From Octopus sinensis (lineage: Eukaryota), in assembly GCF_006345805.1 (NCBI RefSeq), contig NC_043022.1, positions 15,066,001 to 15,130,000 on the forward strand: a DNA stretch of 64,000 nucleotides. Reading direction: 5' to 3'. Shown one piece after another: positions 61,620 through 61,763 of the stretch. Below the pieces are notes generated by a model. The model made no database searches. It was given only the letters and a program-made list of their open reading frames with translations, and was not told where the DNA came from. The position numbers were made by a program, and so were the translations under genes. Position 1 is the stretch's first letter. Every line of letters starts with the position of its first letter.

Positions 61620-61763
61620 ACTTGGAATGTTCAGACGAGTTGATGTCAGCCTTGAAAAAGTCATGTCATGTTGAGATATTTATTTGATCTAAAAGATCAA
61701 ATATCTTAAAATGTTTCGATTTTTTCAAGGCTGACATCAATTTATCTGAAACATTCGGAAGTT
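61620..61763. repeat. Foldback inverted repeat centred on 61691-61693, spanning the CARD-only stop codon
   Basis: Exact arms tatttgatct/agatcaaata (10 bp) and ttgatgtcagccttgaaaaa/tttttcaaggctgacatcaa (20 bp), with continuous imperfect pairing between and beyond. Confidence 0.85.

What the first reader, a model, noticed from the sequence alone, without database searches (positions are those of the whole stretch)
61620..61763. The CARD-only gene's stop codon appears to have been created by a foldback inversion
Seen: right after the LLD codons that end the CARD, the sequence becomes an inverted copy of the preceding ~70 nt (10-bp and 20-bp exact blocks with continuous imperfect pairing, 3-nt loop at 61691-61693). 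The inverted arm supplies QINIST and the TGA. The caspase paralogs read DPSVYPMKF here and have no such palindrome. Inference: a template switch amputated the protease domain at the domain boundary. The mRNA would carry a ~70-bp hairpin across the stop (possible ADAR or Dicer substrate). The parental gene has a natural near-inverted match (ctttttcaaagcc versus cttttcaaggct) that might have seeded it.
Basis: partly seen in the sequence, partly recalled or inferred. Interest (0 to 1): 0.7.

Follow-up and report, generated by a model that had tools for sequence, protein, structure and literature searches.

The report
Caspase gene truncated by snap-back deletion
In Octopus sinensis, one copy in a tandem family of CARD-caspase genes lost its protease half in a ~3.7-kb deletion. 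The deletion was sealed by a ~65-base inverted copy of the gene's own last codons, leaving a hairpin and a new stop codon. This is a clean natural example of a known mutation mechanism, and the leftover CARD-only reading frame is probably a decaying relic.

Summary
Arms 61626-61690 and 61694-61762 form an imperfect palindrome with a 3-nt loop (RNA MFE -59.8 kcal/mol, z = -9.3). The 3' arm is an inverted copy of the CARD's last codons and holds the tail QINIST and the TGA.

The window is Octopus sinensis chromosome CM016884.1. The outgroup O. bimaculoides has two closest relatives, one of them syntenic. Both read ...GATCTTTTAGAC|GAACAG... (LLDEQTVYPMKF) into an intact protease, with no palindrome. 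Relative to that state, O. sinensis lacks about 3.67 kb: the protease domain plus its 3' flank. The gap is bridged by about 62 templated inverted bases, primed at a pre-existing TCT-TTT-AGA mini-hairpin and rejoined at C/AAGTT microhomology.

A pristine inverted copy would read LLDQIS-TAA. Today's QINIST-TGA arose through a later 4-nt duplication and a T>C change.

O. vulgaris keeps the outer arm B and the same right junction, so the event predates the split of those two species. It has since replaced most of the CARD, arm A and the loop with unrelated sequence.

The ancestral ATG is GTG in both species, and dN/dS against O. bimaculoides is 0.85. Its "seed" motif is not. A working CARD-only gene is doubtful.

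The parts
61666..61971 (-). CARD-only ORF ('P61'): 101 codons from GTG to TGA. It is a type-B CARD of the octopus CARD-caspase array and has no protease domain.
   Evidence: ORF list and translation. Pfam CARD 29.5 bits, above the 23.9 cut-off. AF2 predicts six helices (pLDDT 66) and the top Foldseek hits are CARDs. 91% nt identity to O. bimaculoides XP_014790087.2 over the CARD.
61969..61971 (-). GTG at the position of the ancestral ATG start codon. The start is lost in both O. sinensis and O. vulgaris.
   Evidence: Five other array members of two species have ...TATATAAAC/TATATGAGC-ATG here. P61 and its O. vulgaris copies have GTG.
61924..61926 (-). First in-frame ATG (codon 16). The RefSeq model XP_036369441.1 uses it as its start. 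It would cut four residues off predicted helix 1.
61694..61762 (-). Arm A: native CARD codons (about ...NVSDKLMSALKKSKHFKIFDL) that served as the template for the inverted copy.
   Evidence: Colinear with the paralogues and with both O. bimaculoides genes. It has changed at only 1-2 sites since the event.
61691..61693 (.). 3-nt loop (TTT on the gene strand) of the pre-existing mini-hairpin TCT-TTT-AGA (61696-61688) that primed the snap-back.
   Evidence: O. bimaculoides has the same GATCTTTTAGAC. Homology to it ends after TTAGA at 61688, and the next base T (61687, against ancestral C) is the first templated base.
61626..61690 (-). Arm B: inverted copy of arm A. About 62 nt (61626-61687) are templated; 61688-61690 is the native AGA. 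It supplies the tail codons QINIST and the stop.
   Evidence: The outer two thirds are present in O. vulgaris with the same arm-B-specific substitutions.
61666..61668 (-). Present stop codon TGA, inside arm B.
61678..61685 (.). ATTT-ATTT: a 4-nt tandem duplication in arm B relative to arm A and all relatives. It shifts the tail frame from QIS-TAA to QINIST-TGA.
61302..61625 (-). Right flank: the ancestral intergenic/upstream region of the next gene (P60). In O. bimaculoides it lies 3.67 kb downstream of the LLD codons. The junction with arm B is at C 61625, followed by imperfect AAGTT microhomology.
   Evidence: 82-88% identity to L004 8619-8805 and 9391-9512, and 84% to L003 9161-9474. Junction alignment. 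No homology to any protease or unit sequence in the window.
61972..62130 (-). P61 upstream region, homologous to the promoters of the full-length genes. It contains the invariant ACCAGGAAGT (62067-62076) and a P61-specific upstream ATG (62031-62033).
59808..60779 (-). P60: the next gene downstream, an intact intronless type-A CARD-caspase (323 aa). RefSeq fuses its protease part to the P61 CARD.
56185..57135 (-). P57: intact intronless type-A CARD-caspase (316 aa).
62984..64000 (-). P64: type-A CARD-caspase, cut by the window end (351 aa in full, protein P0002).

Best explanation
P61 is the 5' stump of a type-B CARD-caspase gene in the Octopus sinensis tandem caspase array. The event happened in the common ancestor of O. 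sinensis and O. vulgaris, and most likely after the split from O. bimaculoides. A 3' DNA end, either a stalled nascent strand or a resected break, terminated at ...GATCTTTTAGA in the DLLD codons that close the CARD.

That end snapped back on itself: AGA paired with TCT across a TTT loop. It was then extended for about 62 nt using the CARD's own last codons as template. It let go at ...AACATTC and re-annealed by 1 nt (C), next to a further imperfect AAGTT match, in the upstream region of the next gene about 3.7 kb away.

The net result was one compound mutation. The protease domain and its 3' flank were deleted, a roughly 65+65-nt palindrome was created, and an immediate in-frame stop appeared in the inverted copy (originally LLD-QIS-TAA).

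Arm B has since decayed: nine substitutions in three clusters, a 4-nt duplication and a 1-nt deletion. This changed the tail to QINIST-TGA. The start codon mutated to GTG. In O. vulgaris most of the CARD, arm A and the loop were replaced by a 216-bp unrelated segment. The O. sinensis ORF is therefore most likely a non-functional relic that happens to remain open.

Shown: the palindrome, both breakpoints, the ancestral state, and the sharing of arm B between two species. Inferred: the enzymology (replicative template switch or break repair), that it was a single event, and the pseudogene status.
For: Palindrome and its significance.

Arm B derives from the P61 lineage's own arm A: about 16 shared derived sites against the type-A paralogues.

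Species and locus identity: L001 matches the window at 100%.

Outgroup state: the O. bimaculoides genes XP_052832960.1 (syntenic) and XP_014790087.2 read ...GATCTTTTAGAC GAACAGACAG.CTACCCGATGAAG... into intact protease ORFs. They have no inverted repeat and no hairpin (DNA fold z = +0.85).

Right junction: homology to O. bimaculoides L004 8619 onwards starts at window 61625, exactly where arm-derived sequence ends. The interval L004 4951-8618 contains no N run.

No protease remnant.

O. vulgaris: the syntenic orthologue, with flanks 96-97% identical and colinear over 2.9 and 9.8 kb, has arm B's outer part with the same derived substitutions and the same right junction.

Original stop: reconstructed as QIS-TAA.

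Decay: ATG>GTG, a P61-specific upstream ATG, dN/dS 0.85, changes at otherwise conserved residues D22Y, Y74N and D75V, and the O. vulgaris replacement.

Mechanistic precedent: template-switch mutations of 28-83 nt that make hairpins in one step (PMC10710096; PMC5453318); foldback templated inverted insertions at breaks using microhomology (PMC11724301); and Pol theta stem-loop extension from two terminal base pairs (PMC11292364 abstract).
Against: Arm B carries nine substitutions in about 62 nt (about 15%). That is more than the roughly 5-9% expected for one neutral lineage since the O. bimaculoides split: dS is 0.10 and the flank identity is 82-84%. The substitutions fall in three tight clusters, so there were probably only four or five events (error-prone synthesis or later small switches), but an older date is not excluded.

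O. bimaculoides has two candidate orthologues, and the 5' half of the syntenic one is hidden by an assembly gap.

The arm A-loop-arm B centre is seen only in the O. sinensis assembly, and no reads were available.

Deletion and inverted copy could have been two events.

The ORF is still open over 101 codons, arm A has changed far less than arm B (1-2 against 9 sites), and RefSeq starts a model at its ATG. Residual function is therefore not excluded.
Confidence: 0.8

Rival explanations
1. P61 is a working CARD-only decoy, analogous to human CARD16/17/18. It would be translated from ATG 61926 into an 86-aa CARD that modulates assembly of the neighbouring type-B caspases. Its mRNA hairpin might be an ADAR or Dicer substrate.
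For: The ORF is open for 101 codons with no frameshift, and the CARD scores above the Pfam cut-off. Six helices are predicted, with the breakpoint at the very end of helix 6. The promoter-like ACCAGGAAGT block is retained. Arm A has 1-2 changes against 9 in arm B since the event. P61-specific and O. bimaculoides-specific amino-acid changes are about equal, 6-7 against 6. RefSeq places a start at this ATG.
Against: The ancestral ATG is lost, and a new upstream ATG opens a 13-codon uORF. Starting at M16 removes part of helix 1. dN/dS is 0.85. Conserved residues have changed. The tail was frameshifted without consequence. All three O. vulgaris copies that keep the 5' CARD have lost CARD residues from about 33 onwards. 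The arms are losing pairing rather than keeping it. A rough estimate of my own, from knowledge and not computed here, puts the chance of the ORF staying open under neutrality at about 0.1-0.2, which is not small. The exact 86-aa and 101-aa products are absent from the protein collection.
Confidence: 0.2
2. The mechanism is the same but the event is older. The truncation predates the O. bimaculoides split, the two full-length O. bimaculoides genes are paralogues rather than orthologues, and O. bimaculoides lost the stump.
For: Arm B divergence (about 15% plus indels) exceeds one lineage's expected neutral share. Two arm-B states (TCA, GAG) match the distant type-A paralogues rather than arm A plus O. 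bimaculoides. The array turns over quickly.
Against: Synteny: in O. bimaculoides the gene order type-B gene, right-flank homologue, type-A gene matches O. sinensis. Arm A is 94.6% identical to the syntenic O. bimaculoides gene. If the event were older, the derived states that arm A shares with the full-length O. bimaculoides genes (TCG, AAG) would need parallel change or gene conversion. The arm-B changes are clustered, and both conflicting sites are transitions, one at a CpG.
Confidence: 0.12
3. The palindrome is a foldback or MITE-type transposon, or another repeat, inserted after the CARD.
For: Other hairpin palindromes occur in the window, five in 64 kb, and one sits in a multicopy repeat.
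Against: Arm A is native CARD coding sequence, colinear with all relatives. Arm B matches only arm A and, on the opposite strand, the paralogous CARDs. There are no other copies in the window or in the five fetched loci, and no target-site duplication.
Confidence: 0.01
4. The palindrome is an assembly or sequencing chimera (a fold-back read artefact).
For: The centre of the palindrome is seen in one assembly only, and no reads could be examined.
Against: Technical fold-backs give perfect palindromes. Here the arms are about 80% identical and differ by two indels. Arm B, its derived substitutions and its right junction recur in an independent assembly of a different species, O. vulgaris GCA_951406725.2, in five copies. 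The nearest N gap is 10 kb away.
Confidence: 0.02
5. The 3' arm is a decayed piece of the protease domain (for example around ELFKAF) that only resembles an inverted CARD by chance, or the ctttttcaaagcc / cttttcaaggct pair seeded the switch.
For: The 12-13-nt near-inverted match exists in type-A paralogue P57, at codons 81 and 141.
Against: Arm B against the post-LLD coding sequence scores at shuffle level (11-12 against 9.7 +/- 1.1), while against the inverted arm A it scores 35. Inverted homology runs about 25-35 nt beyond the motif on both sides, so the motif is not at a junction. In the real parental type (O. bimaculoides) the second motif reads CTTTTCACTGCT.
Confidence: 0.01

Closest known systems
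Template-switch mutations (four-point model; Loytynoja & Goldman 2017, PMC5453318; de novo miRNA hairpins, Monttinen et al. 2023, PMC10710096)
   Same: A stretch of tens of bases is replaced by the reverse complement of adjacent sequence in one step. This creates a perfect hairpin where the ancestor had none. The documented sizes (28-83 nt) bracket this one.
   Different: In those cases the return point is close by. Here the strand re-annealed about 3.7 kb away, so the event also deleted a whole protein domain and its flank. The hairpin lies in a coding exon and itself supplies the stop codon.
Snap-back / foldback templated inverted insertions at double-strand breaks (SD-MMEJ, Pol theta-mediated end joining; Yu et al. 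2024, PMC11724301; PMC11292364; PMC5728401)
   Same: A 3' end folds on a 2-4-nt inverted microhomology with a short loop and is extended on its own strand. The product is then joined to the other end by microhomology, giving a deletion plus an inverted templated insertion. The 3-bp stem, 3-nt loop and 1-nt (plus AAGTT) rejoin seen here fit that signature.
   Different: The reported insertions are mostly 5-34 bp. This one is about 62 nt. The enzymology cannot be read from the sequence.
FoSTeS / MMBIR and ODIRA (PMC10766183)
   Same: Replication-based template switching at short interrupted inverted repeats. It occurs in tandemly duplicated loci and produces palindromic junctions.
   Different: Those models usually yield kilobase-scale inverted duplications or triplications. 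Here only about 62 nt are inverted and the net change is a loss.
Human CARD-only proteins CARD16 (COP), CARD17 (INCA), CARD18 (ICEBERG) next to CASP1 (PMC3775265)
   Same: A CARD-only reading frame derived from a duplicated CARD-caspase, sitting in the same tandem cluster as its full-length relatives and restricted to a narrow lineage.
   Different: The human genes are expressed and act as regulators. For P61 expression is unknown, the start codon is lost and the sister species has destroyed the CARD. The way the truncation arose (inverted templated junction) has not been described for the human COPs in the papers read here.

Membership tests
CARD (death-fold) domain | Sequence match to the CARD profile above the curated threshold | tested here: met
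   PF00619, 29.5 bits against a 23.9 cut-off, residues 16-87.
CARD (death-fold) domain | Six-helix bundle resembling solved CARDs | tested here: met
   AF2 predicts six helices at 12-25, 29-38, 44-51, 56-69, 75-84 and 88-98. Confidence is only moderate (pLDDT 66, pTM 0.51). The top Foldseek hits are Apaf-1, CARD8, caspase-1 and ASC CARDs with TM 0.6-0.74, but weak E-values of 0.015 or worse.
CARD-only regulatory protein (COP-like decoy) | ORF encoding a CARD and nothing else, derived from and adjacent to a CARD-caspase | tested here: met
CARD-only regulatory protein (COP-like decoy) | Intact translation start and evidence of expression | tested here: inconclusive
   The ancestral ATG is GTG, the first ATG is codon 16, and a new uORF is present. 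No transcript data were available. The RefSeq model starting at this ATG needs a non-canonical intron.
CARD-only regulatory protein (COP-like decoy) | Conservation of the truncated ORF in related species, or purifying selection | tested here: not met
   In the O. vulgaris orthologues CARD residues from about 33 onwards are replaced by a 216-bp filler. dN/dS is 0.85.
CARD-only regulatory protein (COP-like decoy) | Binds or modulates the parental caspase or its adaptor | not testable with these tools
   Needs a protein interaction or activity assay.
Template-switch / snap-back templated inverted insertion | The novel segment is the reverse complement of immediately adjacent sequence | tested here: met
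Template-switch / snap-back templated inverted insertion | The ancestral (outgroup) sequence lacks the inverted copy and is colinear up to the switch point | tested here: met
   Two O. bimaculoides genes are colinear to ...TTAGA and then continue into the protease, with no hairpin.
Template-switch / snap-back templated inverted insertion | Microhomology or a short inverted repeat at the switch points | tested here: met
   TCT-TTT-AGA is pre-existing in the outgroup. There is a C overlap plus AAGTT (6 of 8) at the return point.
Template-switch / snap-back templated inverted insertion | A single event, as opposed to a deletion and an inverted duplication at different times | not testable with these tools
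   No intermediate state is available. O. vulgaris already has both the deletion junction and arm B.
Foldback transposon / MITE | Multicopy element with terminal inverted repeats and a target-site duplication, unrelated to host coding sequence | tested here: not met
   The arm sequence is single-copy outside the CARD genes, and arm A is host coding sequence.
Known RNA family (miRNA precursor or other) | Rfam match at the gathering score | tested here: not met
   There are only generic long-hairpin matches to plant MIR families, at 24-43 bits against gathering scores of 70-211. The hairpin is absent from O. vulgaris and O. bimaculoides.

The most novel reading that the evidence does not exclude
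The stump is a lineage-specific, expressed CARD-only regulator. Its mRNA carries a roughly 65-bp hairpin straddling the stop codon, and in a coleoid with pervasive A-to-I editing that hairpin is edited. Editing of the UGA to UGG would extend the protein, or the hairpin would be diced. One snap-back mutation would then have created a decoy protein and an RNA-level switch on it at the same time.
Probability: 0.06. Interest if true: 0.75.

Novelty: new member of a known kind. Interest (0 to 1): 0.4.

Why it matters
This is an unusually well-resolved natural example of how one template-switch or snap-back event can do three things at once. It cut a multi-domain gene exactly at a domain boundary, supplied a stop codon, and created a long hairpin. 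Both breakpoints, the priming mini-hairpin and the ancestral state are recoverable from an outgroup, and the event is shared by a sister species.

It shows a route to CARD-only (decoy-type) reading frames different from the simple nonsense or frameshift mutations usually assumed.

It also flags annotation problems. RefSeq fuses the stump to the neighbouring gene through a non-canonical intron, so the truncation is invisible in the protein databases.

Biologically the product is probably a decaying relic in a rapidly turning-over immune or apoptosis gene array, which limits the importance.

Tried and rejected
1. A protein search with the 101-aa ORF found nothing, and exact look-ups of the 101-aa, 86-aa and P60 products found nothing. 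The first search was a false negative of the word filter: XP_036369441.1 contains 80 identical residues and came up only when P60 was the query.

2. I looked for a decayed protease or any unit homology in 61450-61620 with tblastn, word-7 blastn and Smith-Waterman against shuffles. Nothing was found. The stretch turned out to be ancestral intergenic DNA, recognisable only in O. bimaculoides and in another O. sinensis unit.

3. I first polarised the arm differences with the type-A paralogues. That suggested equal decay of both arms and no stop in a pristine copy. Both conclusions were overturned by the closer O. bimaculoides outgroup.

4. I first thought that P61 predates the P57/P60/P64 unit duplication and was deleted from the P57 unit. 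I dropped this. The 74%-similar pieces at 57801-57930 and upstream of P64 are no closer to P61 than ordinary type-A promoters are.

6. The MITE, Rfam family and assembly-artefact readings were rejected.

7. dN/dS and relative-rate tests for function were inconclusive, because CARDs in this family evolve at omega about 1 even in intact genes.
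Full report
**1. What is in the window**

The last 8 kb of the window holds a head-to-tail array of intronless genes on the minus strand. Each encodes an N-terminal CARD fused directly to a caspase-3/7-like protease:
- P57 (56185-57135, 316 aa)
- P60 (59808-60779, 323 aa)
- P64 (62984 to the window end)

The best solved relative of the protease is caspase-3 (E = 1.4e-27).

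Between P64 and P60 lies a fourth, shorter reading frame, P61 (61666-61971, minus strand, 101 codons). It is a CARD only: Pfam CARD scores 29.5 bits against a cut-off of 23.9. AlphaFold2 predicts six helices at moderate confidence (pLDDT 66), and the nearest solved folds are Apaf-1, CARD8, caspase-1 and ASC CARDs.

P61 is only about 71% (nt) and 50% (aa) identical to the three neighbours. The homology includes about 160 nt of upstream sequence and stops right after the codons LLD.

**2.

Immediately after LLD the gene strand turns into the reverse complement of its own preceding ~65 nt.
- The arms are 61694-61762 (native) and 61626-61690 (copy), around the loop 61691-61693.
- There is a perfect inner 10-nt pair and a 20-nt exact block, and 81% complementarity over 52 nt.
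- The RNA fold is -59.8 kcal/mol, against -26.8 +/- 3.6 for shuffles (z = -9.3).
- The copy aligns to the inverted native arm with a score of 35, against 7.6 +/- 1.3 for shuffles. It does not align to the coding sequence that follows LLD in the paralogues (score 11-12, noise level).
- The tail QINIST and the TGA (61666-61668) lie in the copy.
- The paralogues read LLDDPSVYPMKF and have no such repeat.

Hairpin palindromes as such are fairly common in this window, five with arms of 40 nt or more. This one is distinctive because it is made from coding sequence.

**3. Source and relatives**

A protein search with P60 returned only Octopus caspases. Fetching their loci showed that the window is Octopus sinensis GCA_006345805.1, chromosome CM016884.1. 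Locus L001 is 100% identical to the window, with L001 position x corresponding to window position 71927 - x.

The family has two CARD types. P57, P60 and P64 are type A (MSMDDD...ILELLDDPSVYPMKF). P61 is type B (MSxEQ.H.ISQ.RFMQIRVDF...KIFDLLDE.TVYPMK). Full-length type-B members exist in all three sequenced species.

**4. The outgroup resolves the event**

In O. bimaculoides (GCA_001194135.2, CM046626.1) two intact type-B genes are the closest relatives of P61.

*XP_052832960.1* (L004 4839-5655):
- It is 94.6% identical to window 61798-61688.
- Its 5' half is hidden by an assembly gap.
- It is syntenic. About 3.67 kb after its LLD codons comes L004 8619-8805, the homologue of window 61625-61422 (82%). 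Then comes the homologue of 61426-61302 (88%), and then a type-A gene.

*XP_014790087.2* (L005 9995-10963):
- It is 91% identical over the whole CARD and begins with ATG.

Both read ...AAGATATTTGATCTTTTAGAC|GAACAGACAG(C/T)CTACCCGATGAAGTTC..., that is LLDEQTVYPMKF followed by an open protease ORF. Neither has an inverted repeat there, and the region does not fold (z = +0.85).

*Left breakpoint.* P61 is colinear with both genes up to TTAGA (61688) and then diverges completely. Its next base, T at 61687 against the ancestral C, is already what a copy of the opposite arm predicts. The ancestral sequence contains the mini inverted repeat TCT-TTT-AGA. This is exactly the 3-bp stem and 3-nt loop at the centre of the palindrome.

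*Right breakpoint.* Arm-derived sequence ends ...TCTGAACATTC at 61625. Homology to the O. bimaculoides intergenic DNA begins CCAAGTTC... at the same base. The two parents share C..AAGTT (6 of 8) at that spot.

The stretch 61450-61620 has no match elsewhere in the window. It is therefore simply the ancestral upstream region of P60.

*Net change.* About 3.67 kb was lost (protease domain plus 3' flank), about 62 templated inverted bases were inserted, and both joints show microhomology.

**5. Timing**

The syntenic O. vulgaris locus (GCA_951406725.2, OX597839.1; L002) has flanks that are colinear and 96-97% identical over 2.9 kb and 9.8 kb. It contains:
- the P61 5' region, including the GTG;
- the outer two thirds of arm B, with the same arm-B-specific substitutions;
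- the same right junction.

But the 205 bp corresponding to window 61875-61670 are replaced by a 216-bp unrelated filler. That 205 bp covers the CARD from about residue 33, arm A, the loop and inner arm B. The disrupted unit has since been amplified: L002 holds five filler copies, three of them with the CARD 5' part.

An inverted copy of CARD codons that lacks its template can only be a remnant. So the snap-back event predates the O. sinensis / O. vulgaris split, and O. vulgaris later destroyed the palindrome and the CARD.

Given synteny with an intact O. bimaculoides gene, the event most likely postdates that split. One tension remains. Arm B carries nine substitutions in about 62 nt, plus a 4-nt duplication and an O. 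sinensis-specific 1-nt deletion. Arm A carries only one or two changes. That is more than one neutral lineage's share, given dS = 0.10 and 82-84% flank identity.

The nine substitutions fall in three tight clusters (TAAA>CGAG, GAAA>ATGT creating a CATGA-CATGA repeat, and TTTA>GTTG). They may therefore represent four or five events, error-prone synthesis at origin, or later small switches. An older date with paralogy is kept as a rival at 0.12.

**6. The stop codon**

Copying either the present arm A or the O. bimaculoides arm in inverted orientation gives ...DLLD-Q-I-S-TAA. So the event itself created an in-frame stop three codons after the breakpoint.

The present tail QINIST-TGA results from the ATTT tandem duplication at 61678-61685, which shifts the frame, and a T>C change that removed the old TAA. 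Without the duplication the frame would run on for 28 codons.

**7. Is it a gene?**

*Against:*
- The ancestral ATG, present in five other array members of two species, is GTG in O. sinensis and O. vulgaris.
- A P61-specific upstream ATG opens a 13-codon uORF.
- The first in-frame ATG (61926) removes part of predicted helix 1.
- dN/dS against O. bimaculoides is 0.85, and residues conserved in all other type-B CARDs have changed (D22Y, Y74N, D75V).
- The tail was frameshifted, and the sister species lost the CARD.

*For:*
- The frame is still open.
- The invariant promoter-like block ACCAGGAAGT is retained (62067-62076).
- Arm A has changed little.

Because intact CARDs of this family also evolve at omega about 1 or higher, rate tests cannot decide. 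I put a functional CARD-only protein at about 0.2.

RefSeq does not annotate a CARD-only product. XP_036369441.1 joins the P61 CARD (from ATG 61926) after FDLLD to the P60 protease. Every junction that yields that protein has a non-canonical intron: none is GT-AG, GC-AG or AT-AC. The model is most likely homology-driven or reflects template jumping between the shared CTnTTAGA.

**8. Mechanism and what is known**

The signature has four parts: a 3' end folding on a 3-bp inverted microhomology with a 3-nt loop, self-templated extension, release, and microhomology-guided rejoining at a distance. It matches two known processes.
- Template-switch mutations, which create perfect hairpins in one step. 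Events of 28-83 nt are documented in primates (PMC10710096; four-point model, PMC5453318).
- Foldback or snap-back templated inverted insertions at double-strand breaks (PMC11724301; Pol theta stem-loop extension from two terminal base pairs, PMC11292364 abstract).

It differs from the first in that the return point is 3.7 kb away, so a domain is deleted. It differs from the second in the length of the copy: about 62 nt against mostly 5-34 bp. Sequence alone cannot tell replication from break repair.

The outcome parallels the human CARD-only genes beside CASP1, which also arose from caspase duplicates (PMC3775265). Membership of that functional class is not established here: conservation was tested and not met, and expression and binding were not testable.

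It lies inside the arms rather than at a junction, and it is weaker in the parental type.

No Rfam family matches at threshold.

**9. Verdict**

This is a new, well-documented instance of a known mutational mechanism. The probable outcome is a decaying CARD-only relic, so interest is moderate (0.4).

Noticed in passing
window 59808-61926 (L001 10001-12119): RefSeq XP_036369441.1 ('caspase-3-like', 307 aa) fuses the P61 CARD, from ATG 61926, to the P60 protease directly after FDLLD. All ten junctions that reproduce the protein need a non-canonical ~1.2-kb intron (CT-AG, AT-AG and so on). The model is probably an artefact, and it hides the truncation.
   Followed up: yes
L002 (O. vulgaris OX597839.1:33760280-33787954), e.g. 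8896-9110, 12262-12475, 15574-15789: In O. vulgaris a 216-bp filler of unknown origin replaces the CARD 3' part, arm A and the loop. The disrupted unit is present five times. Several adjacent type-A genes look frameshifted. The annotated 472-aa 'caspase-8-like' protein strings three partial CARDs from successive units.
   Followed up: partly
window 62067-62076 (also about 95-105 nt upstream of the ATG of P57, P60 and three O. bimaculoides genes): ACCAGGAAGT, an ETS-like GGAA core inside GGAAGTGAAA, is invariant in six array members of two species, while the surrounding upstream sequence is only about 70% conserved. It is a likely shared promoter element.
   Followed up: partly
window 10612-10823 and 13869-14000: Two further hairpin palindromes that are single-copy within the window: 92-nt arms at 93% with a 28-nt loop, and 58-nt arms at 90% with a 16-nt loop. 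They could be MITEs, template-switch products or hairpin RNA loci. A third, at 49477-49656, lies in a multicopy SINE-like repeat.
   Followed up: partly
window 56185-57135, 59808-60779, 62984-64000: The array genes are intronless CARD + caspase-3/7-like proteases with NTCQV or NTCQA in place of the canonical QACRG pentapeptide. The His (SHG) and Cys are kept. The CARDs of the recent duplicates differ mostly by non-synonymous changes (dN/dS about 0.9-2.7).
   Followed up: partly
window 57801-57930 (and L001 7063-7192, upstream of P64): Stretches of about 130 nt lying roughly 650-800 nt upstream of P57 and P64 are 74% similar to the P61 upstream region 61991-62130 and to type-A promoters. They look like old promoter remnants. 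Their origin is not explained.
   Followed up: no
window 61655-61668 and 61630-61640 (arm B): The substitutions in arm B are clustered: four in GAAA>ATGT, which creates a CATGA-CATGA tandem, and three in TAAA>CGAG. This suggests multinucleotide events (error-prone synthesis or secondary small template switches) rather than independent point mutations.
   Followed up: partly
window 58147-58755; 58990-59345; 62255-62520; 51799-51898: There is a tandem repeat block between P57 and P60, long TG/TA-rich microsatellites downstream of P60 and P64, and a 100-N assembly gap 10 kb from the locus.
   Followed up: no
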